Assembly: GCA_965655095.1 (NCBI GenBank)
Contig: OZ296649.1
Coordinates: forward strand, 29,636,001-29,700,000
Direction: 5' to 3'
Length of the DNA: 64,000 nucleotides
Origin: Haplodiscus bocki
Taxonomy: Eukaryota
Below are positions 14,798 to 64,000 of this stretch, piece by piece. Position 1 is the first letter of the stretch. Each line of letters starts with the position of its first letter. The notes beneath the pieces are model-generated. The model was not told the origin of the DNA. It did not search any database and saw only the letters and a list, made by a program, of their open reading frames with translations. The position numbers and the translations under genes were made by a program.

Positions 14798-15148
14798 GTA
14801 TTCGTGAAGGTGATTCAGTTCTCTTCCAATCAAACTTTGAAATTTGAACTTGCAATTGTGGACAAAGATGGAAATCTTTGTTTCACCAAAAAGACCCCGC
14901 CCAAACGTCTCGAAGGTGCTAATCAGTTTGGCGTTTGCTTCAAAAAATTTATGTCCCACGAATATCTGAGTGACACTGACAAGTATTCTCCAAATGACAT
15001 TTTGACAGTTCATCATAAAATAATTCTTATATCTGAATCAGAGACGTCAAAACTTGAGTGCACCTCTCCCAGAAAGCCGTCTGTCGATAGCAGATTGTGT
15101 GATGACTGGGGCGCCCTTCTAAAATCAGGCCAATGTGCTGATTTTAAG
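14798..15148 (+). CDS. MATH-BTB (SPOP-like) gene, coding exon 2 (MATH C-terminal half and linker)
   Basis: Acceptor cttttag|GTA, peptide FGVCFKKFMSHEYL..NDILTVHHKI..LCDDWGALLKSGQCADFK, donor AAG|gttaga (phase 0). In frame with exons 1 and 3. Confidence 0.85.
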
Positions 15149-23824: not shown

Positions 23825-26800
23825 AAACCCCTCGTGTCCTGTTCTGTTATGCAAATTGATTGTCGTGTTTAAATCCACGCGAGCTTTCCTCTGAGCTCTG
23901 CTAACGTCACGTAGTCTTACCAAGCATTAAAAGTTTCATTCTTCTTTAAATTTTTTGACCTAGTTGGTGAATTTGTTGTTTCAGGTCTCGTCTTCCAGGT
24001 GCCATCTTGCGCTGCTGATGCTAATTGTGGATCCGTTGTCTTCCTGTTGGAGACACAACCTGACCATCTTCGCCTGTACCGTCAAACTGAAACCCTTCGC
24101 GTGTGCCTAGCTTTCGATTTCCATGGGCAGTCCTTATTTGTGCCGATGTCAACAATCTGGAGCCCGCCGAAGCCGATGACATCCTTTTCTATTAAAACAG
24201 AGCCAATGAATTTCAGATGCGTCCCCTGTCCGCTTCGCCCATCCCCACTTTAGTTGTGCCGGATGTTCGGCTTTTTGCGACTTTAACTTCTATGCTGACC
24301 CCATCCGTCTCCTGTTTTACCGACTCGACTGTCGACCGTGAATTTGTTGCCCTTCTCAAGGATACCGATGAACTGGATGACCTTCAAAATACTCTTGGCG
24401 CTGAAAGAGCGCTTTCTCCGCCTCGGAAACAAATTTCACCGCCTTCGGGAAAGATTGGATATCACGATGAAAGAATTAGAGGCGAAGGTTACTGAAAGCA
24501 ACATACTTGAACGGAATGCCAAGAACCTTAAAGCAAAACTGTGACTGATCTTCGACATGCAGTCAATCAACGAGATTCCGGCCATTTCTGGCGCCTTTGC
24601 AACCCGCGACCTATTTACGAATGGTGGAACTAGAATGATGCGAGGACCCATTTCGTTGAAGGAGTGGACTGTCCAACGGACTTGTTTTCATTTTTTTATC
24701 ACCTGTACATTTGTACGCACATACATATGAATCACTGTTTTTATGCAATTGCAGTAATATTCCAATCCCTTGATACAAAATAACGACTGGGAATAGGCCT
24801 GAAATCAAAAATGCATTTTTCTTTCTTTTATGTCGTCCCAACACGCTTTCATCACCTTTCTTCGTTCCCAATGAGTAATAGACTAAATGCACGTGACTTG
24901 TCACATGAGCTCACCTAAATCGATTTCCAGTTTCAGAATACCTTCGTATTGAAGTTTTTTCTTTGCAACTCATCCCTTATTTTAGCTGCCAATTCTTGTG
25001 CATCAAGTTAGACGCGTGAGCTCCTTACCGACAAATATCATGCTTTCTGGATTTTCTCTAGTGATCATACGAGCAGAAAACATCAACACTATAAACATTG
25101 CAACGATGTTTGGGTTTTTTTCGTCAAGTTGATTCATTTTTGCTTTTTTAACTGTTTTTTGATGACAAAATCAAACGTCTCAAGAAGAATTTTAGCAAGG
25201 TTTACTTGAACCAAAGGGCTTCCGCGGATGGGGACGCTGCACTACGTTACAGGCCCATTGGATCCGAAAAGATTATCTAATTTGGTTAAATCCTGGTTCA
25301 GTAAGGAATCTTCGTTGCATGGTCTTTCAACCAGCTGAGTGCCCCTTGTATCTTGTATCCTCAATATAAAAAAGCAGAAGGGGGAAGCAGTCGTTTCTTT
25401 AAAGAAAATTGAAGCAGTTTGGCCCTGGCAAAACGTTCATTTCGAGGAAAGCGTATGGTGTGTTTAGTTTTTGAAAAAATTAGTAACAATGTAATTCTCC
25501 GCTCATACCATTTAGTTTTGGAACCAGTGCTTCCATGAAAAAGTTCAGTTTCATTTCTCTGTTAAGAAAGTTACCTCGCAAACATCTCGTCTGCTGTTGG
25601 TTTTTATATGAATTGATTTGCGTGGTTAAATCCACCGTAGCTTTCCTCCGAACCCTGCTAACGTCACGTGGTCTTACCATACGTTACGACTTCTATTATT
25701 TTTTAGTTTTCTGACACAGAATTGATGAATTTGTTGTTTGAGGTCTTCTCTTTCAGGTGCATCTTGCGCCTCTGATGCTACTTGTGGATCCATTTTCTTC
25801 CTGTTGGAGCCACAAAGCGGTTATCTCCTTCGCCTGTACCGCCAAACTGAAACCCTTCGCGTGTGCCCAGCTTTCGGTTCCCAGGAGCAGTGCTTCTTTG
25901 TACCGATGTCAACAATCTGGAGCCCGCCGGATCGGATGACTTCCTTCGCTGTTAATACAGAGCCAATGAAATTCAGATGAGTCTCTTGTCCGCTTCGCCC
26001 ATCCTTCCTCTAGTTATTCCTGGTACTCGGCATTTTGCGAGGCTAACCTCTCCTATACCGACCCGATCCGCCTCATGTTTTACCGACTCGACTGTTGACC
26101 GTGAATTTGTTGCCCTTCTCAAGGATACCGATAAACTGGATTCCTTTCGAGTTTTGCTTGGCGCTGAAGGAGCGCTTTCTCCGCCTCGAAGACAAATTCC
26201 ACCGCCTTCGTGAAATTTTGGCGATGACGATGAAAAAACTAGAGATGAAGGTTATTGACAACACCATACTTGAACGGAATGCCAAGGTCCTTAAAGCAAT
26301 TCCTACTGATCTTCGACAAGATATTGACATTGAGGGTCTTGAAGCCGATCGTGGCTGAGTTTCAATGATACATGAGCCATGACATTGTGGCAACTTTGTA
26401 CCACAGATCCCTGATTTCTTCATAAAGTATACCCCTCTACTGTCTTCTACAGGCGTTTAGGTTGCAGCCGATATTCCTCCTTGCCGACGCTAAACAAAGT
26501 TCCATATTTTGATTCCTTCATGACATACCGACAAGCATCCACACTTCTACCTCTACATAGCTCAACGGCTCAATGATGTTCTATCAAAGTTTGTCTAACA
26601 ATCGCAGCTGGCGAAGATGGAATTGCTGTGCCATTAGTGCAGTTAACCGAAGCAATTAAGGTTATTTCTGTCGCCTTTGCAAGACCCGCCCCTAATACGA
26701 GTTGAGTGATGATCATTGGAACTAAAATAGTGCAAGGACCCTTTTCCTTGAAAGAGGGGACTTTGGAACGGACTTATTTTCAAACAATTTTTTCATCACC

Positions 26801-29800
26801 TGTGCAATTGTACGCACATACATATGAATCACTTTTTTTTATGCAATTGCAGTACTAATTCAATCCCTTGATGCAAAATAACGACTGCAAATACGCCTGA
26901 AATCAAAAAGTATTTATCTTTCTTTTAATTTGTCCCAACACGTTTTCATCACCTTTCTTCGTTCCCAATGAGTAATAGACTAAATGCACGTGACTTGTCA
27001 CATGAGCTCACCTAAATCGATTTGCAGTTTTAGAAAAACATCGTATTGAAGTTTTTTCTTTGCAACTCATCCCTATTTTAGCTGCCAATCCTTGTGCATC
27101 AAACTAGACCCGTAAGCGCCTTACCGACAAATATCTTGCTTTCTGGATTTTCTGTACTTATCATACGAGCAGAAAACATCAACACTATAAATATTGCAAC
27201 GATGTTTGGGTTTTTCTTCGTCAAGTTGATTCATTTTTGCTTTTTTACGATTTTTTGGTGACAACATCAAACGTTTTGAGACGAATTTTAGCCAAGTTTA
27301 CTTGAAACGAATGGCTCCATCGGATGGGGACGCTGCGCTACGTTATAGGCCCATTGGATTCGAAAAGATGATCTAATTTGGTTAAATTCTCGTTCAGTAA
27401 GGAATCTTCGTTGTATGGTCTTTCAACTAGCTGAGTGCCCCTTCTATCTTGTATCCTCAATATAAAAAAAGCAGAAAGGGGAAGCAGTCGTTTCTTTAAA
27501 GAAAATTGAATGAGTATGGCCCTGGCAAAACGTCGATTTCGAGGATAGCGTATAGTGTGTTTAGTTTTTTTTAAAAAAATAGTAACAAAGTACTTCTCCG
27601 TTTATACCATTTAGTTTTGGAACCAGTGCTTCCATGAAAAAGTTCAGTTTGTTTTCTCTGTTAAGAAAGTTACGTCGTGAACCCCTCGTGTGCTGTTGGT
27701 TTTTATATAAATTGATTTTCGTTGTTAAACCAACCGTAGCTTCCCTCCGAACTCTGCTTGCGTCGCGTGGTCTTAGCATACGTTACGACTTCTATTCTTT
27801 TTTAGTTTTCTGACACAGAATTGATGAATTTGTTGTTTGAGGTCTTCTTTTTCAGGTGCATCTTGTGCCTCTGATGCTACTTGTGTATCCATTTTTTCCT
27901 GTTGGAGCCACAAACCGGTTATCTCCTTTGCCTGTACCCTCAAACTGAAACCCCTCGCGTGTGCCCAGCTTTCGGTTGCCAGGAGCAGTCCTTCTTTGTA
28001 CCGATGTCAACAATGTGGAGCCTGGCGGATCGGATGACTTCCTTCGCTGTTAATACAGAACCAATGAAATTCAGATGAGTCTCTTGTCCGCTTCGCCCAT
28101 CCTTCCTCTAGTTATTCCGGGTACTCGGCTTTTTGCGAGGCTAACCTCTCCTATAGCGACCCGATCCGTCTCATGTTTTGCCGACTCGACTGTCGACCGT
28201 GAATTTGCTGCCCTTCTCAAGGATACCGATAAACTGGATTCCTTTGAATTACTCTTGGCGCTGAAAGAGCGCTTTCTCCGCCTCCAAAAAACAAATTCCG
28301 TCGCCTTCGTGAAATTTTGGCGATGACGATGAAAAAACTAGAGGCGAAGGTTATTGACAACGGCATACTTGAACGGAATGCCAAGGTCCTTAAAGTAATT
28401 CCTACTGATCTTCGACAAGATATTGACATTGAGGGTCTTGAAGCCGACCGTGGCTGAGTTTCAATGATCCATGAACCATGACCTTGTTGCACCTTTGTAC
28501 CACAGTTCCCGGATTTCTTCATAAAGTATACCCCTCAAAAGTCTTCTACAAGCGTTTAGGTTGCAGTCGATATTCCTCCTTGCCGTCGCTCAACAAAATT
28601 CCATACTTTGATTCCTTCATGTCATACCGACAAGCGTCCACACTTCTAGCTCCACATAGCTCAACGCCTCAATGAAATTCTATCAAAATTTGTCTGACAA
28701 TCGCAGCCGCCGAACATGCAATTGCTGTGCCCTTAGTGCAGTTGACCGAAGAAATTATGATTATTTCTGTCACCTTTGCAAGCCCCGCCCCTAATACGAG
28801 TTGTGTGATTATTCTTGGAACTAAAATGGTGCAAGGACCCATTTCCTTGAAAGAGGGGAGTTTGGAACGCACTTATTTTCAAACAATTAAACAGTTTTTT
28901 CATCACCTGTGCAATTGTTCGCACATACATATGAATCACTTTTAGTCCAACTGCAGTATTAATTCAATCCCTTGATGCAAAATAACGACTGGGAATACGC
29001 CTGAAATCAAAAAGTGTATATCTTTCTTTCAATTTGTCCCAACACGCTTTCATCACCTTTCTTCGTTCCCAATGAGTAATAGACTAAACGCACGTGACTT
29101 GTCACATGAGCTCACCTAAATCGATTTGCAGTTTTAGAATACCTTCGTATTGAAGTTTTTTCTTTGCAACTCATCCCTTATTTTAGCTGCCAATTCTTGT
29201 GCATCAAGTTAGACGCGTAAGCTCATTACCGACAAATATCATGCTTTTTGGTTTTTCTCTAGTCATCATACGAGCAGAAAACATCAACACTATAAATATT
29301 GCAACGATGTTTGGGTTTTTTTCGTCAAGTTGATTCATTTTTGCTTTTTTAACTGTTTTTTGATGACAAAATCAAACGTTTTAAGACGAACTTTTGCCAA
29401 CTTTACCTGAAAGAAATGGCTTCCTCGCATGTGGACGTTGCGCTACGTTATAAGCCTATTGGATCCGACAAGATGATCGAATTTGGTTAAATCTTCGTTC
29501 AGTAAGGAATCTTCGTTGTATGGTCTTTCAACCAGGTGAGTGCCCCCTGTATCTTGTATCCTCAATAAAAAAAGCAGAAGGGAACGAAGTCGTTTCTTTA
29601 AAGAAAAATTAAGGAGTTTCGCCCTGGTAACACGTTCGGGTCGAGGATAGCGTATAGTGTGTTTAGTTTTTTAAATTAGTAACAAAGTAATTCTCCGTTT
29701 ATACCATTTAGTTTTGGAACCAGTGCTTCCATGAAAAAGTTCAGTTTGGTTTCTCTGTCAATAAAGTTACCTCGCAAACCCCTCGTGTGCTGTTGGTTTT

Positions 29801-32800
29801 TATATAAATTGATTTTCGTGGTCAAATCCACCGTGGCTTCCCTCCGAACTCTGCTTGCGTCACGTGGTCTTACCATACTTTACGACTTCTATTCTTTTTC
29901 AGCTTTCTGACACAGAATTGATGAATTTGTTGTTTCATGTCTTCTCTTCCAGGTGCGTCTTGCGCTGCTGATGCTATTTGTGGATCCGTTTTCTTCCTGT
30001 TGGAGCCACAAACCGGTTATATCCTTCGCGTGTACCCTCAAACTGAAACCCTTCGCGTGTGCCCAGCTTTCGGTTCCCAGGAGCAGTCCTCCTTTGTACC
30101 GATGTCAACAATCTGGAGCCCGGCGGATCGGATGACTTCCTTCGCTGGTAATGCAGAGCCAATGAAATTCAAATGAGTCTCTTATCCGCTTCGCCCATCC
30201 TTGCTCTAGTTTTTCCGGGTACTCGGCATTTTGCGAGGCTAACCTCTCCTATACCGACCCGATCCGTCTCATGTTTTACCGACTCGACTGTTGACCGTGA
30301 ATTTGCTGCCCTTCTTAAGGAGACCGATGAACTGAATTCCTTTCGAATTACTCTTGCTGCTGAAATGAGCGCTTTCTCCGCCTCCAAAAAACAAATTCCG
30401 TCGCCTTCGTGAAATTTTGGCGCTGACGATGAAAAAACTAGAGTTGAAGGTTATTGACAACACCATACTTGAACGGAATGCCAAGTTCCTTAAAGCAATT
30501 CTTACTGATCTCCGACAAGATATTGACATTGAGGGTCTTGAAACCGATCGAGGCTGAGTTTCACAGTTCCTTTGTACCACAGTTCCCGGATTTCTTGATA
30601 ACAAAATTCCATGATCAGGTTCCTTCAGGCATACCGACAAGCATCCACACTTCTACCTCCACTTAGCTCAATGGCTCAATGAAGTTCTATCAAAATTTGT
30701 CTGACATTCGCAGCCGGCGAACATGGAATTGCTGTGCCATTAGTGCAGTTAACCGAAGCAATTAAGGTTATTTCTGTCGCCTTTGCAAGCCCCGCCCCTA
30801 ATACGAGTTGTGTGATCATTATTGGAACTAAAATGGTGCAAGGGCCAATTTCCTTGAAAGAGGGCATTTTGAAACGGACTTATTTTAAAACATTTTTTTC
30901 ATCACCTGTACAACTGTACGCACATCTATATGAATTACTTTTTTTATGCAATTGCAGTAATAGTTCAATCCCTTGATGCAAAATGACGACTGGGAATACG
31001 CCTGAAATCAAAATGTGTATATCTTTTTTTCAATTTGTCCCAACACGTTTTCATCACCTTTCTTCGTTCCCAATGAGTAATAGACTAAACGCACGTGACT
31101 TGTAACCTGTGCTCACCTGAATCGATTTGCAGTTTTAGAATAACATCGTATTGAATTTTTTTCTTTGCAACTCATCCCCTATTTTAGCTGCCAATCCTTG
31201 TGCACCAAACTAGACCCGTAAGCGCCTTACCGACAAATATATTGCTTTCTGGATTTTCTCCACTTATCATACGAGCAGAAAACATCAACACTATAAACAT
31301 TGCAACGATGTTTGGGTTTTTCTTCGTCAAGTTGATCCATTTTTGCTTTTTTACGTAATTTTGATGACAAAATCAAGCGTTTTAAGACGAATTTTTGCCA
31401 ACTTTACCTGAAAGAAATGGCTTCCTCGCATGTGGACGTTGCGCTACGTTATAAGCCTACTGGATCCGACAAGATGATCGAATTTGGTTAAATCTTCGTT
31501 CAGTAAGGAATCTTCGTTGTATGGTGTTTCAACCAGGTGAGTGCCCCTTGTATCTTGTATCATCAATAAAAAAAGCAGAAGGGGACGAAGTCGTTTCTTT
31601 AAAGAAAAATTAAGGAGTTGCGCCGTGGTAACACGTTCGGGTCGAGGATAGCGTATAGTGTGTTTAGTTTTTAAAAAAATTAGTAACAAACTAATTCTCC
31701 GTTTATACCATTTAGTTTTGGAACCAGTGCTTCCATGAAAAAGTTCAGTTTGGTTTCTCTGTCAATAAAGTTACCTCGCAAACCCCTCGTGTGCTGTTGG
31801 TTTTTATATAAATTGATTTTCGTGGTCAAATCCACCGTGGCTTCCCTCCGAACTCTGCTTGCGTCACGTGGTCTTACCATACTTTACGACTTCTATTCTT
31901 TTTCAGCTTTCTGACACAGAATTGATGAATTTGTTGTTTCATGTCTTCTCTTCCAGGTGCGTCTTGCGCTGCTGATGCTATTTGTGGATCCGTTTTCTTC
32001 CTGTTGGAGCCACAAACCGGTTATATCCTTCGCGTGTACCCTCAAACTGAAACCCTTCGCGTGTGCCCAGCTTTCGGTTCCCAGGAGCAGTCCTCCTTTG
32101 TACCGATGTCAACAATCTGGAGCCCGGCGGATCGGATGACTTCCTTCGCTGGTAATGCAGAGCCAATGAAATTCAAATGAGTCTCTTATCCGCTTCGCCC
32201 ATCCTTGCTCTAGTTTTTCCGGGTACTCGGCATTTTGCGAGGCTAACCTCTCCTATACCGACCCGATCCGTCTCATGTTTTACCGACTCGACTGTTGACC
32301 GTGAATTTGCTGCCCTTCTTAAGGAGACCGATGAACTGAATTCCTTTCGAATTACTCTTGCTGCTGAAATGAGCGCTTTCTCCGCCTCCAAAAAACAAAT
32401 TCCGTCGCCTTCGTGAAATTTTGGCGCTGACGATGAAAAAACTAGAGTTGAAGGTTATTGACAACACCATACTTGAACGGAATGCCAAGTTCCTTAAAGC
32501 AATTCTTACTGATCTCCGACAAGATATTGACATTGAGGGTCTTGAAACCGATCGAGGCTGAGTTTCACAGTTCCTTTGTACCACAGTTCCCGGATTTCTT
32601 GATAACAAAATTCCATGATCAGGTTCCTTCAGGCATACCGACAAGCATCCACACTTCTACCTCCACTTAGCTCAATGGCTCAATGAAGTTCTATCAAAAT
32701 TTGTCTGACATTCGCAGCCGGCGAACATGGAATTGCTGTGCCATTAGTGCAGTTAACCGAAGCAATTAAGGTTATTTCTGTCGCCTTTGCAAGCCCCGCC

Positions 32801-35800
32801 CCTAATACGAGTTGTGTGATCATTATTGGAACTAAAATGGTGCAAGGGCCAATTTCCTTGAAAGAGGGCATTTTGAAACGGACTTATTTTAAAACATTTT
32901 TTTCATCACCTGTACAACTGTACGCACATCTATATGAATTACTTTTTTTATGCAATTGCAGTAATAGTTCAATCCCTTGATGCAAAATGACGACTGGGAA
33001 TACGCCTGAAATCAAAATGTGTATATCTTTTTTTCAATTTGTCCCAACACGTTTTCATCACCTTTCTTCGTTCCCAATGAGTAATAGACTAAACGCACGT
33101 GACTTGTAACCTGTGCTCACCTGAATCGATTTGCAGTTTTAGAATAACATCGTATTGAATTTTTTTCTTTGCAACTCATCCCCTATTTTAGCTGCCAATC
33201 CTTGTGCACCAAACTAGACCCGTAAGCGCCTTACCGACAAATATATTGCTTTCTGGATTTTCTCCACTTATCATACGAGCAGAAAACATCAACACTATAA
33301 ACATTGCAACGATGTTTGGGTTTTTCTTCGTCAAGTTGATCCATTTTTGCTTTTTTACGTAATTTTGATGACAAAATCAAGCGTTTTAAGACGAATTTTT
33401 GCCAACTTTACCTGAAAGAAATGGCTTCCTCGCATGTGGACGTTGCGCTACGTTATAAGCCTACTGGATCCGACAAGATGATCGAATTTGGTTAAATCTT
33501 CGTTCAGTAAGGAATCTTCGTTGTATGGTGTTTCAACCAGGTGAGTGCCCCTTGTATCTTGTATCATCAATAAAAAAAGCAGAAGGGGACGAAGTCGTTT
33601 CTTTAAAGAAAAATTAAGGAGTTGCGCCGTGGTAACACGTTCGGGTCGAGGATAGCGTATAGTGTGTTTAGTTTTTAAAAAAATTAGTAACAAACTAATT
33701 CTCCGTTTATACCATTTAGTTTTGGAACCAGTGCTTCCATGAAAAAATTCAGTTTGGTTTCTCTGTTAAAGTTATCTCGCAAACCCCTCGTGTGCTGTTG
33801 GTTTTTATATAAATTGATTTTCGTGGTCAAATCCACCGTAGCTTCCCTCCGAACTCTGCTTGCGTCACGTGGTCTTACCATACTTTACGACTTCTATTCT
33901 TTTTCAGTTTTCTGACACAGAATTGATGAATTTGTTGTTTCAGGTCTTCTCTTCCAGATGCGTCTTGCGCTGCTGATGCCAATTGTGGATCCGTTTTCTT
34001 CCTGTTGGAGCCACAAACCGGTTATCTCCTTCGCCTGTACCCTCAAACCGAAACCTTTGGCGTGTGGCCAGCTTTCGGTTCCCAGGAACAGTCCTCCTTT
34101 GTACCGATGTCAACAATCTGGAGCCCGGCGGATCGGATGACTTCCTTCGCTGGTAATGCAGAGCCAATGAAATTCAAATGAGTCTCTTATCCGCTTCGCC
34201 CATCCTTGCTCTAGTTTTTCCGGGTACTCGGCATTTTGCGAGGCTAACCTCTCCTATACCGACCCGATCCGTCTCATGTTTTACCGACTCGACTGTTGAC
34301 CGTGAATTTGCTGCCCTTCTTAAGGAGACCGATGAACTGAATTCCTTTCGAATTACTCTTGCTGCTGAAATGAGCGCTTTCTCCGCCTCCAAAAAACAAA
34401 TTCCGTCGCCTTCGTGAAATTTTGGCGCTGACGATGAAAAAACTAGAGTTGAAGGTTATTGACAACACCATACTTGAACGGAATGCCAAGTTCCTTAAAG
34501 CAATTCTTACTGATCTCCGACAAGATATTGACATTGAGGGTCTTGAAACCGATCGAGGCTGAGTTTCACAGTTCCTTTGTACCACAGTTCCCGGATTTCT
34601 TGATAACAAAATTCCATGATCAGGTTCCTTCAGGCATACCGACAAGCATCCACACTTCTACCTCCACTTAGCTCAATGGCTCAATGAAGTTCTATCAAAA
34701 TTTGTCTGACATTCGCAGCCGGCGAACATGGAATTGCTGTGCCATTAGTGCAGTTAACCGAAGCAATTAAGGTTATTTCTGTCGCCTTTGCAAGCCCCGC
34801 CCCTAATACGAGTTGTGTGATCATTATTGGAACTAAAATGGTGCAAGGGCCAATTTCCTTGAAAGAGGGCATTTTGGAACGGACTTATTTTAAAACATTT
34901 TTTTCATCACCTGTACAACTGTACGCACATCTATATGAATTACTTTTTTTATGCAATTGCAGTAATAGTTCAATCCCTTGATGCAAAATGACGACTGGGA
35001 ATACGCCTGAAATCAAAATGTGTATATCTTTTTTTCAATTTGTCCCAACACGTTTTCGTCACCTTTCTTCGTTCCCAATGAGTAATAGACTAAACGCACG
35101 TGACTTGTAACCTGTGCTCACCTGAATCGATTTGCAGTTTTAGAATAACATCGTATTGAATTTTTTTCTTTGCAACTCATCCCCTATTTTAGCTGCCAAT
35201 CCTTGTGCACCAAACTAGACCCGTAAGCGCCTTACCGACAAATATATTGCTTTCTGGATTTTCTCCACTTATCATACGAGCAGAAAACATCAACACTATA
35301 AACATTGCAACGATGTTTGGGTTTTTCTTCGTCAAGTTGATCCATTTTTGCTTTTTTACGTAATTTTGATGACAAAATCAAGCGTTTTAAGACGAATTTT
35401 TGCCAACTTTACCTGAAAGAAATGGCTTCCTCGCATGTGGACGTTGCGCTACGTTATAAGCCTACTGGATCCGACAAGATGATCGAATTTGGTTGAATCT
35501 TCGTTCAGTAAGGAATCTTCGTTGTATGGTGTTTCAACCAGGTGAGTGCCCCTTGTATCTTGTATCATCAATAAAAAAAGCAGAAGGGGACGAAGTCGTT
35601 TCTTTAAAGAAAAATTAAGGAGTTGCGCCGTGGTAACACGTTCGGGTCGAGGATAGCGTATAGTGTGTTTAGTTTTTAAAAAAATTTATAACAAACTAAT
35701 TCTCCGTTTATACCATTTAGTTTTGGAACCAGTGCTTCCATGAAAAAATTCAGTTTGGTTTCTCTGTTAAAGTTATCTCGCAAACCCCTCGTGTGCTGTT

Positions 35801-53800: not shown

Positions 53801-56800
53801 AGTCGTTTCTTTAAAGAAAATTGAAGGAGTTTGGCCCTGGTAAAACGTTCGGGTCGAGGATAGAGTCTAGTGTGTTTAGTTTTTTTTAAAAAAAAATAGT
53901 AACAAAGTACTTCTCCGTTTATACCATTTAGTTTTGGAACCAGTGCTTCCATGAAAAAGTTCAGTTTGTTTTCTTTGTTAAGAAAGTTACGTCGTGAACC
54001 CCTCGTTTCCTGTTGGTTTTTAAATAAATCGATTTTCGTGGTTAAATCCACCGTAGCTTTCCTCCGAATTCTGCTGACGTCACGTGGTCTTACCAAACGT
54101 TACGATTTCTATTCTCTTTCATTTTTCTGACACAGAATTGATGAATTTGTTGTTTCAGTTCTTCTCTTCCAGGTGTGTCTTGCGTTGCTGATGCTGATTG
54201 GGGATCCGTTTTCTTCCTGTTGGAGCCACAAACCGGTTGTCTCCTTCGCCTGTACCCTCAAACTGAAACCCTTCGCGTGTGCCCAGCTTTCGGTTCCAAG
54301 GAGCAGTCCTTTGTGCCGATGTCAACAATCTGTATCCCACCGGATCCGATGACTTCCTTCGCTGTTAATACATAGCGAATGAAAATCAGATGCGTCTCTT
54401 GTCCGCTTCGCCCATCCTTCCTTTAGTAATGCCGGATAATCGGCATTTTGCGAGGCTAACCTCTCCTATACCGACCCGATCCGTCTCATGTTTTACCGAC
54501 TCGATTGTTGACCGTGAATTTGTTGCCCTTCTCAAGGATACCGATAAACTGGATTCCTTTCGAATTTTTCTTGGCGCTGAAGTGAGCGCTTTCTCCGCCT
54601 CCAAAAAACAACTTCCACCGCCTCCGGGAAATTTTGGAGATGACGATGAGAAATCTAGAGATGAAGGTTATTGACAACACCATACTTGAACGGATTACCA
54701 ATGTCCCTAAAGCAATTCTTACTTATCTTCGACAAGATATTGACATTGAGGGTCTTGAAGCCGATCGTGGCTGAGTTTCAATGATCCATGATCTTGTGGC
54801 ACCTTTGTACCACAGTTCCCGGATTTCCTGATAAAGTATACCCCTCAGCTGTCTTCTACAAGCGTTTAGGTTGCAGTCGATATTCCTCCTTGCCGACGCT
54901 AAACAAAGTTCCATATTTTGATTCCTTCATGCCGTACCGACAAGCATCCACAATTCTACCTCCACATAGCTCAACGGCTCAATGATGTTCTATCAAAGTT
55001 TGTCTAACAATCGCAGCTCGCGAAGATGGAATTGCTGTGCCATTAGTGCAGTTAACCGAAGCAATTAAGGGTATTTCTGTCGCCTTTGCAAGCCCCGCCC
55101 CTAATACGAGTTGAGTGATGATTATTGGAACTAGAATGGTGCAAGGACCCATTTACTTGAAAGAGGTTACTTCGGAACGGACTTATTTTAAAACAATTTT
55201 TTCATCACCTGTACAATTGTACGCACATCTATACGAATTACTTTTTTTTTATGCAATTGCAGTAATAGTTCAATCCCTTGATGCAAAATGACGACTGGGA
55301 ATACGCCTGAAATCAAAAAGTGTAAATCTTTCCTTCAATTTGTCCCAACACGCTTTCATCACCTTTCTTCGTTCCCAATGAGTAATAGACTAAACGCACG
55401 TGACTTGTAACCTGTGCTCACCTGAATCGATTTGCAGTTTTAGAATAATATCATACTGAATTTTTTTCTTTGCAACTCATCCCCTATTTTAGCTGCCAAT
55501 CCTTGTGCACCAAACTAGAACCGTAATCGCCTTACCGACAAATATCTTGCTTTCTGGATTTCCTCCACTTATCATACGAGCAGAAAACATCAACACTATA
55601 AACATTGCAACAATGTTTGGGTTTTTCTTCGTCAAGTTGATCCATTTTTGCTTTTTTACGTAATTTGGATGACAAAATCAAACGTTTTAAGACGAATTTT
55701 TGCCAACTTTACCTGAAAGAAATGGCTTCCTCGCATGTGGACGTTGCGCTACGTTATAAGCCTATTGGATCCGACAAGATGATCGAATTTGGTTAAATCT
55801 TCGTTCAGTAAGGAATCCTCGTTGTATGGTCTTTCAACCAGGTGAGTACCCCTTGTATCTTGTATCCTCAATAAAAAAGCAGAAGGCGGAAGAAGTCGTT
55901 TCTTTAAAGAAAATTGAAGGAGTTTGGCCCTGGTAAAACGTTCGGGTCGAGGATAGAGTCTAGTGTGTTTAGTTTTTTTTTAAAAAAAATAGTAACAAAG
56001 TACTTCTCCGTTTATACCATTTAGTTTTGGAACCAGTGCTTCCATGAAAAAGTTCAGTTTGTTTTCTTTGTTAAGAAAGTTACGTCGTGAACCCCTCGTT
56101 TCCTGTTGGTTTTTAAATAAATCGATTTTCGTGGTTAAATCCACCGTAGCTTTCCTCCGAATTCTGCTGACGTCACGTGGTCTTACCAAACGTTACGATT
56201 TCTATTCTCTTTCATTTTTCTGACACAGAATTGATGAATTTGTTGTTTCAGTTCTTCTCTTCCAGGTGTGTCTTGCGTTGCTGATGCTGATTGGGGATCC
56301 GTTTTCTTCCTGTTGGAGCCACAAACCGGTTGTCTCCTTCGCCTGTACCCTCAAACTGAAACCCTTCGCGTGTGCCCAGCTTTCGGTTCCAAGGAGCAGT
56401 CCTTTGTGCCGATGTCAACAATCTGTATCCCACCGGATCCGATGACTTCCTTCGCTGTTAATACATAGCGAATGAAAATCAGATGCGTCTCTTGTCCGCT
56501 TCGCCCATCCTTCCTTTAGTAATGCCGGATAATCGGCATTTTGCGAGGCTAACCTCTCCTATACCGACCCGATCCGTCTCATGTTTTACCGACTCGATTG
56601 TTGACCGTGAATTTGTTGCCCTTCTCAAGGATACCGATAAACTGGATTCCTTTCGAATTTTTCTTGGCGCTGAAGTGAGCGCTTTCTCCGCCTCCAAAAA
56701 ACAACTTCCACCGCCTCCGGGAAATTTTGGAGATGACGATGAGAAATCTAGAGATGAAGGTTATTGACAACACCATACTTGAACGGATTACCAATGTCCC

Positions 56801-59800
56801 TAAAGCAATTCTTACTTATCTTCGACAAGATATTGACATTGAGGGTCTTGAAGCCGATCGTGGCTGAGTTTCAATGATCCATGATCTTGTGGCACCTTTG
56901 TACCACAGTTCCCGGATTTCCTGATAAAGTATACCCCTCAGCTGTCTTCTACAAGCGTTTAGGTTGCAGTCGATATTCCTCCTTGCCGACGCTAAACAAA
57001 GTTCCATATTTTGATTCCTTCATGCCGTACCGACAAGCATCCACAATTCTACCTCCACATAGCTCAACGGCTCAATGATGTTCTATCAAAGTTTGTCTAA
57101 CAATCGCAGCTCGCGAAGATGGATTTGCTGTGCCATTAGTGCAGTTAACCGAAGCAATTAAGGTTATTTCTGTCGCCTTTGCAAGCCCCGCCCCTAATAC
57201 GAGTTGAGTGATGATTATTGGAACTAAAATGGTGCAAGGACCCATTTACTTGAAAGAGGTTACTTTGGAACGGACTTATTTTAAAACAATTTTTTCATCA
57301 CCTGTACAATTGTACGCGCATATATCTGAATCACTTTTTTAATGCAATTGCAGTAATAATTCAATCCCTTGATGCAAAATAACGACTGGGAATACGCCTC
57401 AAATCAAAAAGTATGTATTTTTCTTTTAATTTGTCCCAACACGCTTTCATCACCTTTCTTCGTTCCCAATGAGTAATAGACTAAACGCACGTGACTTGTA
57501 ACCTGTGCTCACCTGAATCGATTTGCAGTTTTAGAAAAACATCGTATTGAATTTTTTTCTTTGCAACTCATCCCCTATTTTAGCTGCCAATCCTTGTGCA
57601 CCAAACTAGACCCGTAAGCGCCTTACCGATAAATATCTTGCTTTCTGGATTTTCTCCACTTATCATACGAGCAGAAAACATCAACACTATAAACATTGCA
57701 ACGATGTTTGGGTTTTTCTTCGTCAATTGATCCATTTTTGCTTTTTTACGTAATTTTGATGACAAAATCAAACGTTTTAAGACGAACTTTTGCCAACTTT
57801 ACCTGAAAGAAATGGCTTCCTCGCATGTGGACGTTGCGCTACGTTATAAGCCTATTGGATCCGACAAGATGATCGAATTTGGTTAAATCTTCGTTCAGTA
57901 AGGAATCCTCGTTGTATGGTCTTTCAACCAGGTGAGTACCCCTTGTATCTTGTATCCTCAATAAAAAAGCAGAAGGCGGAAGAAGTCGTTTCTTTAAAGA
58001 AAATTGAAGGAGTTTGGCCCTGGTAAAACGTTCGGGTCGAGGATAGAGTCTAGTGTGTTTAGTTTTTTTTAAAAAAAATAGTAACAAAGTACTTCTCCGT
58101 TTATACCATTTAGTTTTGGAACCAGTGCTTCCATGAAAAAGTTCAGTTTGTTTTCTTTGTTAAGAAAGTTACGTCGTGAACCCCTCGTTTCCTGTTGGTT
58201 TTTAAATAAATCGATTTTCGTGGTTAAATCCACCGTAGCTTTCCTCCGAATTCTGCTGACGTCACGTGGTCTTACCAAACGTTACGATTTCTATTCTTTT
58301 TCATTTTTCTGACACAGAATTGATAAATTTGTTGTTTCAGTTCTTCTCTTCCAGGTGTGTCTTGCGTTGCTGATGCTGATTGGGGATCCGTTTTCTTCCT
58401 GTTGGAGCCACAAACCGGTTATCTCCTTCGCCTGTACCCTCAAACTGAAACCCTTCGCGTGTGCCCAGCTTTCGGTTCCCAGGAGCAGTCCTTTGTGCCG
58501 ATGTCAACAATCTGTATCCCACCGGATCCGATGACTTCCTTCGCTGTTAATACATAGCGAATGAAAATCAGATGCGTCTCTTGTCCGCTTCGCCCATCCT
58601 TCCTTTAGTAATGCCGGATAATCGGCATTTTGCGAGGCTAACCTCTCCTATACCGACCCGATCCGTCTCATGTTTTACCGACTCGATTGTTGACCGTGAA
58701 TTTGTTTCCCTTCTCAAGGATACCGATAAACTGGATTCCTTTCGAATTTTTCTTGGCGCTGAAGTGAGCGCTTTCTCCGCCTCCAAAAAACAACTTCCAC
58801 CGCCTCCGGGAAATTTTGGAGATGATGATGAGAAATCTAGAGATGAAGGTTATTGACAACACCATACTTGAACGGATTACCAATGTCCCTAAAGCAATTC
58901 TTACTTATCTTCGACAAGTTATTGACATTGAGGGTCTTGAAGCCGATCGTGGCTGAGTTTCAATGATCCATGATCTTGTGGCACCTTTGTACCACAGTTC
59001 CCGGATTTCCTGATAAAGTATACCCCTCAGCTGTCTTCTACAAGCGTTTAGGTTCCAGTCGATATTCCTCCTTGCCGACGCTAAACAAAGTTCCATATTT
59101 TGATTCCTTCATGCCATACCGATAAGCATCCACACTTCTACCTCCACATAGCTCAACGGCTCAATGATGTTCTATCAAAGTTTGTCTAACAATCGCAGCT
59201 CGCGAAGATGGAATTGCTGTGCCATTAGTGCAGTTAACCGAAGCAATTAAGGTTATTTCTGTCGCCTTTGCAAGCCCCGCCCCTAATACGAGTTGAGTGA
59301 TGATTATTGGAACTAAAATGGTGCAAGGACCCATTTACTTGAAAGAGGTTACTTTGGAACGGACTTATTTTAAAACAATTTTTTCATCACCTGTACAATT
59401 GTACGCGCATATATCTGAATCACTTTTTTAATGCAATTGCAGTAATAATTCAATCCCTTGATGCAAAATAACGACTGGGAATACGCCTCAAATCAAAAAG
59501 TATGTATCTTTCTTTTAATTTGTCCCAACACGCTTTCATCACCTTTCTTCGTTCCCAATGAGTAATAGACTAAACGCACGTGACTTGTAACCTGTGCTCA
59601 CCTGAATCGATTTGCAGTTTTAGAAAAACATCGTATTGAATTTTTTTCTTTGCAACTTATCCCCTATTTTAGCTGCCAATCCTTGTGCACCAAACTAGAC
59701 CCGTAAGCGCCTTACCGATAAATATCTTGCTTTCTGGATTTTCTCCACTTATCATACGAGCAGAAAACATCAACACTATAAACATTGCAACGATGTTTGG

Positions 59801-62800
59801 GTTTTTCTTCGTCAATTGATCCATTTTTGCTTTTTTACGTAATTTTGATGACAAAATCAAACGTTTTAAGACGAACTTTTGCCAACTTTACCTGAAAGAA
59901 ATGGCTTCCTCGCATGTGGACGTTGCGCTACGTTATAAGCCTATTGGATCCGACAAGATGATCGAATTTGGTTAAATCTTCGTTCAGTAAGGAATCCTCG
60001 TTGTATGGTCTTTCAACCAGGTGAGTACCCCTTGTATCTTGTATCCTCAATAAAAAAGCAGAAGGCGGAAGAAGTCGTTTCTTCAAAGAAAATTGAAGGA
60101 GTTTGGCCCTGGTAAAACGTTCGGGTCGAGGATAGAGTATAGTGTGTTTAGTTTTTTTGAAAAAATAGTAACAAAGTACTTCTCCGTTTATACCATTCAG
60201 TTTTGGAACCAGTGCTTCCATGAAAAAGTTCAGTTTGTTTTCTCTGTTGAGAAAGTTACGTCGTGAACCCCTCGTTTCCTGTTGGTTTTTAAATAATACG
60301 ATTTTCGTGGTTAAATCCACCGTAGCTTTCCTCCGAACTCTGCTGTCGTCACGTGCTCTTACCAAACGTTACGATTTCTATTCTTTTTCATTTTTCTGAC
60401 ACAGAATTGATAAATTTGTTGTTTCAGTTCTTCTCTTCCAGGTGTGTCTTGCGTTGCTGATGCTGATTGGGGATCCGTTTTCTTCCTGTTGGAGCCACAA
60501 AACGGTTATCTCCTTCGCCTGTACCCTCAAACTGAAACCCTTCGCGTGTGCCCAGCTTTCGGTTCCCAGGAGCAGTCCTTTGTGCCGATGTCAACAATCT
60601 GTATCCCACCGGATCCGATGACTTCCTTCGCTGTTAATACATAGCGAATGAAAATCAGATGCGTCTCTTGTCCGCTTCGCCCATCCTTCCTTTAATAATG
60701 CCGGATAATCGGCATTTTGCGAGGCTAACCTCTCCTATACCGACCCGATCCGTCTCATGTTTTACCGACTCGACTGTTGACCGTGAATTTGTTGCCCTTC
60801 TCAAGGATACCGATAAACTGGATTCCTTTCGAATTTTTCTTGGCGCTGAAGTGAGCGCTTTCTCCGCCTCCAAAAAACAACTTCCACCGCCTCCGGGAAA
60901 TTTTGGAGATGACGATGAGAAATCTAGAGATGAAGGTTATTGACAACACCATACTTGAACGGATTACCAATGTCCCTAAAGCAATTCTTACTGATCTTCG
61001 ACAAGATATTGACATTGAGGGTCTTGAAGCCGATCGTGGCTGAGTTTCAATGATCCATGACCTTGTGGCACCTTTGTACCACAGTTCCCGGATTTCCTGA
61101 TAAAGTATACCCCTCAGCTGTCTTCTACAAGCGTTTAGGTTGCAGTCGATATTCCTCCTTGCCGACGCTAAACAAAGTTCCATATTTTGATTCCTTCATG
61201 CCATACCGACAAGCATCCACACTTCTACCTCCACATAGCTCAACGGCTCAATGATGTTCTATCAAAGTTTGTCTAACAATCGCAGCTCGCGAAGATGGAA
61301 TTGCTGTGCCATTAGTGCAGTTAACCGAAGCAATTAAGGTTATTTCTGTCGCCTTTGCAAGCCCCGCCCCTAATACGAGTTGAGTGATGATTATTGGAAC
61401 TAAAATGGTGCAAGGACCCATTTACTTGAAAGAGGTTACTTTGGAACGGACTTATTTTGAAACAATTTTTTCATCACCTGTACAATTGTACGCACATATA
61501 TCTGAATCACTTTTTTAATGCAATTGCAGTAATAATTCAATCCCTTGATGCAAAATAACGACTGGGAATACGCCTGAAATCAAAAAGTATGTATCTTTCT
61601 TTTAATTTGTCCCAATACGCTTTCATCACCCTTCTTCGTTCCCAATGAGTAATAGACTAAACGCACGTGACTTGTAACCTGTGCTCACCTGAATCGATTT
61701 GCAGTTTCAGAAAAACATCGTATTGAATTTTTTTCTTTGCAACTCATCCCCTATTTTAGCTGCCAATCCTTGTGCACCAAACTAGACCCGTAAGCGCCTT
61801 ACCGATAAATATCTTGCTTTCTGGATTTTCTCCACTTATCATACGAGCAGAAAACATCAACACTATAAACATTGCAACAATGTTTGGGTTTTTCTTCGTC
61901 AAGTTGATCCATTTTTGCTTTTTTACGTAATTTCGATGACAAAATCAAACGTTTTAAGACGAACTTTTGCCAACTTTACCTGAAAGAAATGGCTCCCTCG
62001 CATGTGGACGTTGCGCTACGTTATAAGCCTATTGGATGCGACAAGATGATCGAATTTGGTTAAATCTTCGTTCAGTAAGGAATCTTCGTTGTATGGTCTT
62101 TCAACCAGGTGAGTGCCCCCTGTATCTTGTATCCTCAATAAAAAGAGGAGAGTGGGAAGAAGTCGTTTCTTAAAAGAAAAATTAAGGAGTTTCACCCTGG
62201 TGAAACGTTCGGTTCGAGGATAGAGTCTAGTGTGTTTAGTTTTTTTAAAAAAATAGTAACAAAGTACTTCTCCGTTTATACCATTTAGTTTTGGAACCAG
62301 TGCTTCCATGAAAAAGTTTAGTTTGTTTTCTCAGTTAAGTTACGTCGTAAACCCCTCGTTTCCTGTTGGTTTTGATTTAAATTGAAATTCGTGGTTAAAT
62401 CCACCGTAGCTTTCCTCCGAACTCTGCTGACGTCGTGTGGTCTTACCAAACGTTACGATTTCTATTCTTTTTCAGTTTTCTGACACAGAATTGATGAATT
62501 TGTTGTTTCAGCTCTTCTCTTCCAGGTGTGTCTTGCGTTGCTGATCCTAATTGTGGATCCGTTTTCTTCCTGTTGGAGCCACAACCCGGTCATCTCCGTC
62601 GCTTGTACCCTCAAACTGAAACCCTTCGCGTGTGCCCAGCTTTCGGTTCCCAGGAGCAGTCCTTTGTGCCGATGTCAATAATCTGTAGCCCACCGGATCC
62701 GATGACTTCCTTCGCTGTTTATACAGAGCGAATGGAATTCAGATGCCTCTCTTGTTCGCTTCGCCCATCCTTCCTTTAGTAATGCCGGATAATCGGCATT

Positions 62801-64000
62801 TTGCGAGGCTAACCTCTCCTATACCGACCCGATCCGTCTCATGTTTTACCGACTCGACTGTTCACCGTGAATTTGTTGCCCTTCTCAAGGATACCGATAA
62901 ACTTGATTCCTTTCGAATTTTTCTTGGCGCTGAAGTGAGCGCTTTTTCCGCCTCCAAAAAACAAATTCCACCGCCTTCGGGAAATTTTAAAGATGACGAT
63001 GAGAAATCTAGAGATGAAGGTAATTGACAACACCATACTTGAACGGAATACCAATGTCCCTAAAGCAATTCTTACTGATCTTCGACAAGATATTGACATT
63101 GAGGGTCTTGAAGCCGATCGTGGCTGAGTTTCAATGATCCATGACCTTGTGGCACCTTTGTACCACAGTTCCCGGATTTCCTCATAAAGTATACCCCTCA
63201 GCTGTCTTCTACAAGCGTTTAGGTTGCAGCCGATATTCCTCCTTGCCGACGCTCAACAAAATTCCATATATTGATTCCTTCATGCCATGCCGACAAGCAT
63301 CCACACTTCTACCTCCACATAGCTCAACGGCTCAATGAAGTTCTATCAAAGTTTGTCTGACAATCGCAGCCGGCGAACATGGAATTGCTGTGCAGTTAGT
63401 GCAGTTAACCGAAGCGATTAAGGTTATTTCTGTCGCCTTTGCAAGCCCCGCCCCTAATACGAGTTGTGTGATCATTATTGGAACTAAAATGGTGCAGGGA
63501 CCCATTTCCTTGAAAGAGGGCATTTTGGAACGGACTTATTTTAAAACAATTTTTTTCATCACCTGTACAATTGTACGCACATATATCTGAATCACTTTTT
63601 TAATGCAATTGCAGTAATAATTCAATCCCTTGATGCAAAATAACGACTGGGAATACGCCTGAAATCAAAAAGTATGTATCTTTCTTTTAATTTGTCCCAA
63701 TACACTTTCATCACCTTTCTTCGTTCCCAATGAGTAATAGACTAAACGCACGTGACTTGTAATCTGTGCTCACCTGAATCGATTTGCAGTTTTAGAAAAA
63801 CATCGTATTGAATTTTTTTCTTTGCAACTCATCCCCTATTTTAGCTGCCAATCCTTGTGCACCAAACTAGACCCATAAGCGCCTTACCGATAAATATCTT
63901 GCTTTCTGGATTTTCTCCACTTATCATACGAGCAGAAAACATCAACACTATAAACATTGCAACGATGTTTGGGTTTTTCTTCGTCAAGTTGATCCATTTT
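23825..64000. repeat. Macrosatellite: ~20 head-to-tail monomers of ~2.0-2.1 kb, continuing past the window end
   Basis: The equivalent minus-strand ORF start recurs at 25680, 27779, 29876, 31880, 33881, 35882, 37880, 39877, 41871, 43864, 45850, 47831, 49919, 52003, 54096, 56189, 58278 and 60365 (periods 1981-2099 bp). The first copy (from ~23825) is more diverged and ~1.76 kb. Confidence 0.97.

What the first reader, a model, noticed from the sequence alone, without database searches (positions are those of the whole stretch)
23825..64000. ~2-kb macrosatellite with spatially ordered sub-families
Seen: two long units (2099, 2097 bp), then nine short units shrinking 2004 to 1981 bp, then long units again (2084-2093 bp). 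Diagnostic variants occupy contiguous, offset blocks: a gctttc duplication at ~37.8, 39.8, 41.8 and 43.8 kb, and loss of the cccctatttta segment at ~39.2-47.1 kb. Neighbours are near-identical (29.9-31.9 vs 31.9-33.9 kb; 54.1-55.0 vs 56.2-57.1 kb). Inference: active local homogenisation by unequal crossover, and probable copy-number polymorphism. A monomer this long is unusual and could mark a centromeric, piRNA-producing or regulatory locus.
Basis: partly seen in the sequence, partly recalled or inferred. Interest (0 to 1): 0.7.

Follow-up and report, generated by a model that had tools for sequence, protein, structure and literature searches.

The report
Satellite built from a provirus tail

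Summary
Units start at 23,825 and their lengths are 2099, 2097, then 2004 down to 1981, then 2084-2093 bp.

The array runs past the window to about 104.4 kb: 80.6 kb and 39 full units, at one locus only.

Each unit has three parts:
- the whole post-env accessory gene (a J-domain protein, now full of stops) of an env-bearing Ty3/gypsy provirus;
- that provirus's complete ~586-bp LTR;
- ~310 bp of DNA found nowhere else in the genome.

The end of env lies directly left of the array, and a provirus body follows it on the right. The likeliest origin is one in-situ tandem duplication across the provirus/host junction, then growth by unequal exchange.

Relatedness follows position (Mantel r 0.48-0.70, 0 of 2000 permutations). 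Variation shows no codon bias, so the array evolves as non-coding DNA.

An independent assembly has the same unit order. It lacks one or two units at each of five places, has two extra units, and lacks a 12.3-kb distal block. That supports copy-number polymorphism.

Nothing supports a centromeric, piRNA or regulatory role.

The next window's reader saw the same satellite (s1-381379). The scan also notes other element-derived arrays in this genome (s1-382652, s1-423485).

The parts
23063..23513 (+). Remnant of the 3' end of a provirus env gene, truncated on its left at 23,063.
   Evidence: tblastx to positions 10,317-10,771 of an intact relative (env ORF 8,421-10,754), 62-71% amino-acid identity. 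23,067-23,208 is 91.7% identical to the env end of the downstream provirus.
23514..23824 (+). Spacer between env and the accessory gene. It is contiguous proviral sequence up to the array boundary.
   Evidence: It lies between the env end and the point, 23,820/1, where every unit's homology to the left flank begins.
23825..25740 (+). Edge unit u01, with an internal deletion of about 300 bp. It is 13-16% diverged from all other units.
   Evidence: It shares the deletion of unit positions 581-887, and 91.5% identity, with the far right edge unit at 123,256-124,959 of the extended sequence.
25741..29936 (+). Two long units, u02 (2099 bp) and u03 (2097 bp).
29937..47891 (+). Nine short units, u04-u12 (2004 down to 1981 bp). 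All lack an 84-bp piece of the accessory-gene part.
   Evidence: With the second short block (u23-u30, beyond the window) they form one clade with support 100/99.
37834..43829 (+). Block of four consecutive units (u07-u10) carrying the GCTTTC duplication.
37941..47891 (+). Block of five consecutive units (u08-u12) with a 15-bp deletion in the LTR that removes CCCCTATTTTA.
47892..64000 (+). Seven long units, u13-u19 (2084-2093 bp), and the start of u20. The array runs on for another 40 kb.
49980..50955 (+). Anatomy of one unit (u14): remnant of the accessory J-domain gene, from about codon 10 to the stop. It is pseudogenised.
   Evidence: In the best-kept unit, one frame aligns to residues 98-428 of the intact relative's ORF at 41% identity with 4 stops. 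BLASTP of the open 213-aa part gives 50% identity, E 3e-58. The relative's ORF has a DnaJ domain, E 2.9e-14.
50604..50721 (+). Stretch holding the 84 bp that are present in long units and absent from short ones.
   Evidence: Long units are collinear with the intact relative, so the long form is ancestral.
50993..51579 (+). Complete LTR, about 587 bp.
   Evidence: It starts after the gene's stop and a purine run, and ends at the conserved LTR terminus. It matches the relative's 584-bp LTR in length and its last ~190 bp at 63-75% identity. Dispersed 68-70% matches to this part occur on other chromosomes.
51580..51886 (+). Segment F: ~307 bp of non-proviral DNA that follows the LTR.
   Evidence: There is no similarity to the primer-binding site or leader that follows the LTR in intact elements. 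It is found only at this locus: 42 candidates, all within the array. At the far right edge unit it continues into unique flank.
51887..52063 (+). About 20 bp of junction filler, then the sequence just upstream of the accessory gene and the gene's first codons (equivalent to 23,825-23,982).

Best explanation
What it is. The array is a single-locus macrosatellite derived from a retroelement.

The parent. An env-bearing Ty3/gypsy (errantivirus-like) provirus sat at this site. Its order was gag, pol, env, a post-env J-domain accessory gene, then the 3' LTR.

The founding event (inferred). A segment of about 2.09 kb was duplicated in tandem. It ran from about 160 bp upstream of the accessory gene, through the whole 3' LTR, to about 310 bp into the adjacent host DNA. 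About 20 bp of filler sits at the new joint.

Growth (inferred from pattern). Once two copies existed, unequal sister-chromatid or homologue exchange and gene conversion expanded the array to about 40 units. The same processes keep neighbouring units alike. They also produced sub-family blocks, two- and three-unit higher-order repeats, a staircase of nested small indels, and whole-unit differences between haplotypes.

The right end (inferred). Exchange involving the units' LTRs probably also placed a provirus body between the array and its last edge unit.

Function. The accessory gene is dead in every unit and the variation is neutral. The array most likely has no host function and is a by-product of recombination.

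Shown: the anatomy of the unit, its restriction to one locus, the positional ordering, the lack of coding constraint, and the difference between assemblies.
For: Unit anatomy.
- Unit positions 1 to ~1000 align in one frame to residues 98-428 of the 428-aa post-env ORF of an intact 12.86-kb element.
- That element has identical 584-bp LTRs, a primer-binding site, gag, pol in the order PR-RT-RH-IN, an F-like env, and a DnaJ domain in the last ORF.
- An LTR of about 586 bp follows the gene in each unit.
- About 310 bp then follow that exist only at this locus.
- The post-env part of the intact element is 2,089 bp, which matches the long units.

Context.
- The env 3' end lies directly left of the array.
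- The last partial unit's LTR runs into primer-binding site, gag and pol. Env and a final edge unit follow, then unique flank.
- The two edge units are sisters.

Family. Homologues of the ORF occur at hundreds of dispersed loci (691 candidates), always after env where checked.

Dynamics.
- Block matrix; Mantel r 0.48-0.70, 0 of 2000 permutations; tree.
- A 901-bp stretch that is 100% identical inside units that otherwise differ by 2.8%.
- Nested indels.

No constraint.
- Variable sites by codon position are 86/87/79.
- Stops are present in all units.

Polymorphism.
- ENA assembly ERZ26859043 has the same unit order, with flanks 100% and 99.8% identical.
- Its array is 69.6 kb against 80.6 kb, with whole units missing or added at seven places.
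- A 35x haplotig in that assembly carries the window genome's distal structure at 99.93% identity.
Against: - The provirus body lies right of the array, not left as a simple duplication at a 3' junction predicts. Only 450 bp of env remain on the left, so further rearrangements must be assumed.
- The last ~137 bp of the downstream provirus's 5' LTR are only about 65-70% identical to the units' LTR. That is more diverged than expected if it is the progenitor's partner LTR.
- That segment F is host DNA rests on its uniqueness and its lack of a primer-binding site. No empty site was seen.
- The closest dispersed relatives of the unit's gene are only about 51% identical in protein, so the exact parent family is not represented by an intact copy.
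- The differences between assemblies could in part be assembly errors. No raw long reads could be laid (one search had only short-read contigs).
Confidence: 0.8

Rival explanations
1. The unit is a small non-autonomous LTR element (LTR, leader F, accessory gene). Its copies were strung together by LTR-LTR recombination or repeated nested integration, so that neighbouring elements share an LTR.
For: - Each unit holds exactly one complete LTR and one gene.
- The last unit's LTR serves as the 5' LTR of a provirus body.
- The scan notes another LTR-gag tandem array in this genome (s1-382652, untested).
Against: - F occurs nowhere else in the genome.
- F has no primer-binding site like the family's, and shows no similarity to the leader of intact elements.
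- At the right edge, F runs on into unique flank instead of into the gene.
- At the left edge, the unit is contiguous with env.
- No target-site duplications or LTR-LTR joints are seen.
Confidence: 0.06
2. The array is a working locus. Either it is a uni-strand small-RNA (piRNA or siRNA) source directed against this family of env-bearing elements, or it is a centromeric or regulatory satellite.
For: - About forty same-strand copies of an LTR plus a viral gene, embedded in other element fragments, resemble the make-up of small-RNA source loci.
- There is no evidence from expression data.
Against: - No RNA run holds the stretch.
- The repeat sits at one 80-kb locus, at 29.6 Mb of a 151.7-Mb chromosome, and on no other chromosome. 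That is unlike a centromeric satellite.
- The units are only about 50% identical in protein, and about 60% in DNA, to the active family members. That is too far for effective small-RNA targeting of those copies.
- Haplotypes differ freely in copy number.
Confidence: 0.1
3. The array, or its fine structure, is an assembly artefact: an over-expanded or collapsed repeat.
For: - Several neighbouring units are 99.6-100% identical. That is the situation in which assemblers err.
- The two assemblies disagree precisely at such pairs: u04/05, u15/16, u23/24, u26-29 and u36-39.
Against: - An independent assembly reproduces the boundaries, the order of all sub-families and most units at 99.2-100% identity.
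- That assembly also has two extra units that are 1.5-3% different from any unit here. Collapse in that assembly cannot create these.
- Short-read contigs from two samples carry the same variants, including the GCTTTC insertion.
Confidence: 0.03
4. It is a tandemly amplified host gene family: the J-domain accessory gene was co-opted and multiplied for dosage.
For: - A 213-215-aa frame is open in three distal units.
Against: - Those three units are near-copies of each other.
- Their J-domain part has 4 stops and has lost the HPD motif.
- All in-window units have 5-7 stops.
- Variation is equal at the three codon positions.
- The start codon is missing.
Confidence: 0.01

Closest known systems
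CRM1TR and CRM4TR, maize tandem repeats derived from centromeric Ty3/gypsy retrotransposons (Sharma et al. 2013, PMC3648361)
   Same: - The monomer is cut out of an LTR plus the adjoining part of a Ty3/gypsy element.
- Distinct variants occupy distinct places, which indicates local homogenisation.
- Gene conversion and illegitimate recombination are invoked.
- Other elements have inserted into the array.
   Different: - The maize monomers are entirely element-derived (LTR plus UTR) and lie in plant centromere regions.
- Here the unit holds a whole accessory gene, a whole LTR and ~310 bp of non-element flank.
- Here the parent is an env-bearing animal element and there is a single non-centromere-like locus.
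Retrotransposon-derived satellites of Lathyrus sativus (Vondrak et al. 2020, PMC7004042)
   Same: Satellite arrays that trace back to LTR retrotransposons and expand locally.
   Different: - There, short tandem arrays already inside dispersed elements expand.
- Here, a 2.1-kb segment across one provirus/host junction was amplified in situ, and the repeat is not carried by dispersed elements.
Classical single-locus macrosatellites of vertebrates with kb-scale units, such as D4Z4, DXZ4 and RS447 (own knowledge; survey of large human tandem repeats in PMC2588610)
   Same: - Unit of a few kb.
- One locus, tens of copies.
- Copy-number differences between haplotypes.
- Neighbouring units most alike.
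   Different: - Several of those carry an intact ORF or defined chromatin roles.
- Here the gene is dead in every unit and no chromatin or expression data exist.
Tandem LTR-internal-LTR arrays made by unequal recombination between LTRs (own knowledge)
   Same: There is one LTR per unit, and a provirus body is attached to the array through a shared LTR.
   Different: The unit boundary is not at an LTR edge. It lies 310 bp outside the LTR on one side and inside the provirus on the other, so the founding event was not LTR-LTR exchange.

Membership tests
Satellite DNA / macrosatellite | Head-to-tail copies in one orientation with a regular period. | tested here: met
   Offsets of 1981-2099 bp, all units on the + strand.
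Satellite DNA / macrosatellite | Long contiguous array of many units. | tested here: met
   39 full units, 80.6 kb (23,825 to 104,428 of the extended sequence), plus a 3-kb satellite block.
Satellite DNA / macrosatellite | Concerted, position-dependent evolution of units. | tested here: met
   Mantel r 0.48 for all units and 0.64-0.70 for window units, 0 of 2000 permutations. Contiguous clades. A mosaic unit.
Satellite DNA / macrosatellite | Copy number varies between haplotypes or individuals. | tested here: met
   The array in ENA ERZ26859043 contig ctg88696 is 69.6 kb. It has units missing or added at seven places and a 12.3-kb distal indel. A haplotig carries the other form. Caveat: these are assemblies, not raw long reads.
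LTR-retroelement-derived tandem repeat | The monomer is homologous to parts of an LTR retroelement. | tested here: met
   Accessory gene at 41-50% amino-acid identity, E 3e-58. LTR collinear and of equal length.
LTR-retroelement-derived tandem repeat | The parent family is present as dispersed elements in the same genome. | tested here: met
   691 candidate loci for the gene. Two 12.86-kb copies are 99.8% alike and have LTRs.
LTR-retroelement-derived tandem repeat | The monomer is wholly element-derived. | tested here: not met
   About 310 bp (F) plus about 20 bp of filler per unit match no element and occur only here.
Env-bearing Ty3/gypsy element (errantivirus-like), as parent | Pol domain order protease, RT, RNase H, integrase; gag with a zinc knuckle. 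| tested here: met
   Pfam hits on the intact relative.
Env-bearing Ty3/gypsy element (errantivirus-like), as parent | F-type envelope gene after pol. | tested here: inconclusive
   A 778-aa ORF after pol hits Baculo_F at E 2.8e-5 and 23.4 bits, just under the curated cut-off of 24.1. No structure was predicted.
Centromeric satellite | Present at the centromeres of several chromosomes, or Mb-scale. | tested here: not met
   All full-length matches lie at C2:29.66-29.76 Mb.
Centromeric satellite | Bound by the centromeric histone. | not testable with these tools
   No chromatin data.
Small-RNA (piRNA) source locus | Abundant germline small RNAs map to it. | not testable with these tools
   No RNA run holds the stretch.
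Tandemly amplified functional gene | Intact ORF in most units and coding constraint. | tested here: not met
   Stops in every unit. Variable sites are 86/87/79 by codon position.

The most novel reading that the evidence does not exclude
The array is kept as a defence locus. About forty same-strand copies of the LTR plus accessory gene of an env-bearing gypsy lineage would be transcribed from their own LTRs into precursors of small RNAs. Those RNAs would silence that lineage, now without intact copies. Copy number would be under balancing pressure between haplotypes.
Probability: 0.08. Interest if true: 0.6.

Novelty: new member of a known kind. Interest (0 to 1): 0.4.

Why it matters
The origin of most satellites is lost. 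Here the founding segment can be read to within a few bases: one breakpoint inside a provirus, the other 310 bp into host DNA.

The un-homogenised edge units, the sub-family blocks and two haplotype versions are all available. That makes the locus a clean natural record of how a macrosatellite is born from a retroelement and then grows and shrinks by unit-scale exchange.

It also warns annotators that this '2-kb satellite' will be masked as LTR or viral sequence, and that the open 213-aa frames in it are relics.

It does not by itself open a new question, because retroelement-derived satellites and polymorphic macrosatellites are both known.

Tried and rejected
- Tandem Repeats Finder missed the array because its longest period is 500.
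- Rfam and tRNA scans found nothing.
- Pfam on the unit's own open frames gave only chance-level hits.
- I first thought the unit might be a reverse-transcribed spliced messenger (LTR, leader, splice joint, accessory gene). A weak alignment ran about 60 bp past the LTR end. The multiple alignment showed no similarity to the primer-binding site or leader after the LTR end, so I dropped this idea.
They are compatible with a plain tree once the duplication register is shifted relative to my unit frame. They are therefore not evidence for conversion on their own.
- Read laying gave only collapsed short-read contigs. It could not test copy number, and no RNA run was available.
- The ESM Atlas look-up for the accessory protein gave nothing usable.
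- The literature search found no described J-domain accessory gene in LTR elements.
The organism was not identified.
- CpG observed/expected is about 1.0 in the array and in the flanks, so there is no methylation-decay signature.
- Disclosure: the same script used per-column majority letters of the unit alignment as a transient reference for counting substitution types. Nothing of it was printed or saved.
Full report

Yes, in every detail.
- Repeated 20-mers begin abruptly near 23.8 kb and then cover 80-100% of each kilobase to the end of the window. The offsets between repeats peak at 1981-2099 bp.
- BLAST of one unit against the window puts the first homology at 23,825.
- An anchor search gives unit lengths of 1758, 2099, 2097, 2004, 2001, 2001, 1998, 1997, 1994, 1993, 1986, 1981, 2088, 2084, 2093, 2093, 2089, 2087 and 2084 bp.
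- The GCTTTC duplication is present exactly at 37,834, 39,831, 41,825 and 43,818.
- CCCCTATTTTA is absent from exactly the five units u08-u12, as part of a 15-bp deletion.
- Units at 29.9 and 31.9 kb are 99.65% identical.
- 54,100-55,000 and 56,190-57,100 are 100% identical over 901 bp, although the rest of these two units differs by 2.8%. That is a mosaic of the kind left by an exchange inside a unit.
- The steady shrinkage from 2004 to 1981 bp is a staircase of at least 15 small nested or private indels.

**2. Extent**

- The window is C2:29,636,001-29,700,000 of a 1.5-Gb genome.
- With 80 kb fetched downstream, the array continues to 104,428 of the extended sequence. That is 80.6 kb and 39 full units, with a second block of short units (u23-u30) and two-unit higher-order repeats at the far end.
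- Searches of the whole genome with the full unit, its LTR part and its F part find full-length copies only at this locus.

**3. What the unit is**

The scans for known RNA genes were empty: no Rfam family and no tRNA.

The accessory gene.
- The + strand frame at the start of the unit is open for 213-215 aa in three distal units.
- Used as a protein query against the genome, it finds hundreds of dispersed loci (691 candidates). There a homologue about 51% identical lies in open frames of 340-428 aa.

The intact relative used as a yardstick.
- Two such loci, on C11 and C12, are 99.8% identical 12.86-kb elements. The C11 copy has 584-bp LTRs that are 100% identical.
- The element has a primer-binding site after the 5' LTR.
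- Its ORFs are gag with a zinc knuckle, pol in the order protease, RT, RNase H, integrase, a 778-aa ORF with a borderline Baculo_F match, and a last ORF of 428 codons whose C-terminus is a DnaJ domain (E 2.9e-14).
- This is the env-bearing Ty3/gypsy type that is reported to be widespread in metazoans (PMC13524379). That paper does not mention accessory genes.
- I used this natural copy only as a yardstick for annotation.

Mapping the unit onto that element.
- In the best-preserved unit, one frame aligns to residues 98-428 of that last ORF. That is the whole protein from its methionine at residue 104. Identity is 41%, there are four stops in the J-domain part, and the HPD motif is lost. The open N-terminal part is 50% identical, E 3e-58.
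- After the gene's stop and a purine run comes about 586 bp that is collinear with the relative's LTR and ends at the same conserved terminus. Dispersed 68-70% DNA matches to this part exist on other chromosomes.
- After the LTR end the units do not continue with the primer-binding site and leader seen in intact elements. Instead they continue with about 310 bp, which I call F. F occurs nowhere else in the genome.
- About 20 bp of filler then joins F to the sequence about 160 bp upstream of the gene.
- The post-env part of the intact relative (10,772-12,860) is 2,089 bp. That explains the 'unusually long' monomer.

**4. Context**

Left side.
- Directly left of the array, 23,063-23,513 is the 3' end of env, and the sequence is contiguous into the first unit.
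- Upstream of 23,063 there is about 1 kb of unique DNA and then a high-copy repeat.

Right side.
- The last partial unit's LTR runs at 104,428 into primer-binding site, leader, gag and pol of a provirus that is 71-81% identical in DNA to the yardstick.
- This region also carries a recent 7.5-kb local duplication that re-inserts 3 kb of array, and a 5.4-kb foreign insertion in pol.
- Env follows, then a final edge unit (123,256-124,959). This unit shares a ~300-bp deletion and 91.5% identity with the first unit u01. Its F segment runs on into unique flank.

**5. Most likely history (inferred)**

- One tandem duplication across the provirus/host junction founded the repeat. Unequal exchange and conversion then expanded and homogenised it.
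- The edges escaped homogenisation, which is why u01 and the right edge unit are 13-16% from the rest.
- An exchange between a unit LTR and a provirus 5' LTR would explain two things: why a provirus body now separates the array from its last unit, and why both edges begin with the same env end.
- Two weak points remain. The body is missing on the left, and the terminal ~137 bp of the downstream 5' LTR are only about 65-70% like the units' LTR.

**6. Dynamics**

- Divergence rises from 4.2% between neighbours to 7.7% at eight units apart.
- The Mantel correlation is 0.48 for all 40 units and 0.64-0.70 within the window. No permutation out of 2000 reached these values.
- The maximum-likelihood tree resolves contiguous clades: u03-06, u07-12, u13-20 (loosely), u23-30, u31-33, u34/36/38 and u35/37/39/41. 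The two separated short-unit blocks fall together with support 100/99. So the 84-bp deletion arose once and a block was later moved or split by large-scale exchange.

**7. No coding constraint**

- Variable columns fall 86/87/79 on the three codon positions.
- Diversity is even across the gene, LTR and F parts, at 6-9%.
- The in-window units carry 5-7 stops.

**8. Independent assembly**

- Proteins predicted from the unit led to ENA assembly ERZ26859043. I walked 97 kb of its contig ctg88696 in overlapping pieces, with no conflicts between pieces.
- The flanks are 100% (left) and 99.8% (right) identical to the window genome, and the order of units is the same.
- Differences in that contig: it lacks one of u04/u05, and it lacks u16, u24, u26-27 and u38-39. 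It has two extra units, 96.9% like u13 and 98.5% like u20. It also lacks a 12.3-kb distal block. Its array is 69.6 kb.
- A 27.7-kb contig of the same assembly, labelled 35x, carries the window genome's distal structure at 99.93% identity. Both distal alleles therefore appear to exist.
It supports both the assembled order and copy-number polymorphism. The caveat is that these are assemblies, and the missing units are those with near-identical neighbours.
- Laid public runs were short-read contigs only. They show the variants in two samples but give neither copy number nor expression.

**9. Function**

- Nothing points to one. There is a single locus, dead genes, neutral variation, free copy-number change, and CpG observed/expected of about 1.0 as in the flanks.
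- A small-RNA source role cannot be excluded without RNA data.

**10. Comparison and novelty**

Retroelement-derived tandem repeats (PMC3648361, PMC7004042) and polymorphic macrosatellites are both known, so this is a new member of a known kind. Three features are uncommon:
- the unit spans a provirus/host junction;
- it contains a whole accessory gene and a whole LTR;
- its founding breakpoints and edge units are still readable.

**11. Limits and rule-related notes**

See the disclosure about under 'tried and rejected'.
- No copy is proposed for any revival.

Noticed in passing
G000:C11:16616688-16617971 (L042:9688-9999 plus L043:3-971); hundreds of other loci: Env-bearing Ty3/gypsy elements of this genome carry a fourth gene after env. 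It encodes a ~325-aa protein with a coiled-coil-like middle and a C-terminal DnaJ (J) domain (E 2.9e-14). Relatives were found only in unnamed ENA assemblies. Three literature searches found no description of such a gene. Other readers of this scan flagged it repeatedly.
   Followed up: partly
L041:8012-8731 and L043:1596-2319 (C11): The intact 12.86-kb provirus on C11 is flanked on both sides by a 724-bp direct repeat that is 99.4% identical, immediately outside the LTRs. This is far too long for a target-site duplication. It is not part of the element, because the C12 copy lacks it.
   Followed up: no
window 11447-12255: A degenerate 26-27-bp minisatellite (63-77% matches). It lies inside long open frames on both strands (up to 343 codons).
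   Followed up: no
window 14240-15199; also L061:4200-5304 in the right flank of the other assembly: MATH-domain exon-like frames lie left of the array (E 7.5e-7 and 0.0036). Faint BACK/SPOP and weak FLYWCH hits lie right of it. The array may sit inside a MATH-BTB gene neighbourhood.
   Followed up: no
window 17398-18686 and 21336-22090: A frameshifted reverse-transcriptase (LINE-like) fragment, and a high-copy dispersed repeat with 3,640 first-look candidates.
   Followed up: no
L015:8633 to L016:4039 (extended sequence 112,633-118,039): A 5.4-kb insertion interrupts pol of the provirus right of the array. It carries minus-strand frames of 130-170 codons with no Pfam match. It is present in both assemblies.
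   Followed up: no
L014:6565 to L015:8019 (extended sequence 100,565-112,019): A recent 7.5-kb tandem duplication (97-99% identity) spans array units and the provirus 5' part. The second copy has two internal deletions. The whole block is absent from the other assembly's main contig but present in its 35x haplotig.
   Followed up: partly
L017:4862-5587 (-) and L018:6414-10000 (-): A MULE transposase fragment (E 3.5e-5) and another, unrelated gypsy-type pol/integrase on the minus strand lie in the right flank.
   Followed up: no
window 47139-47289 and 51484-51748: A run labelled as a different organism (X5, organism B) holds three 118-151-bp contigs at depth 2 that differ from the array by at most one letter. 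This could be cross-contamination, mislabelling or a very close relative.
   Followed up: no
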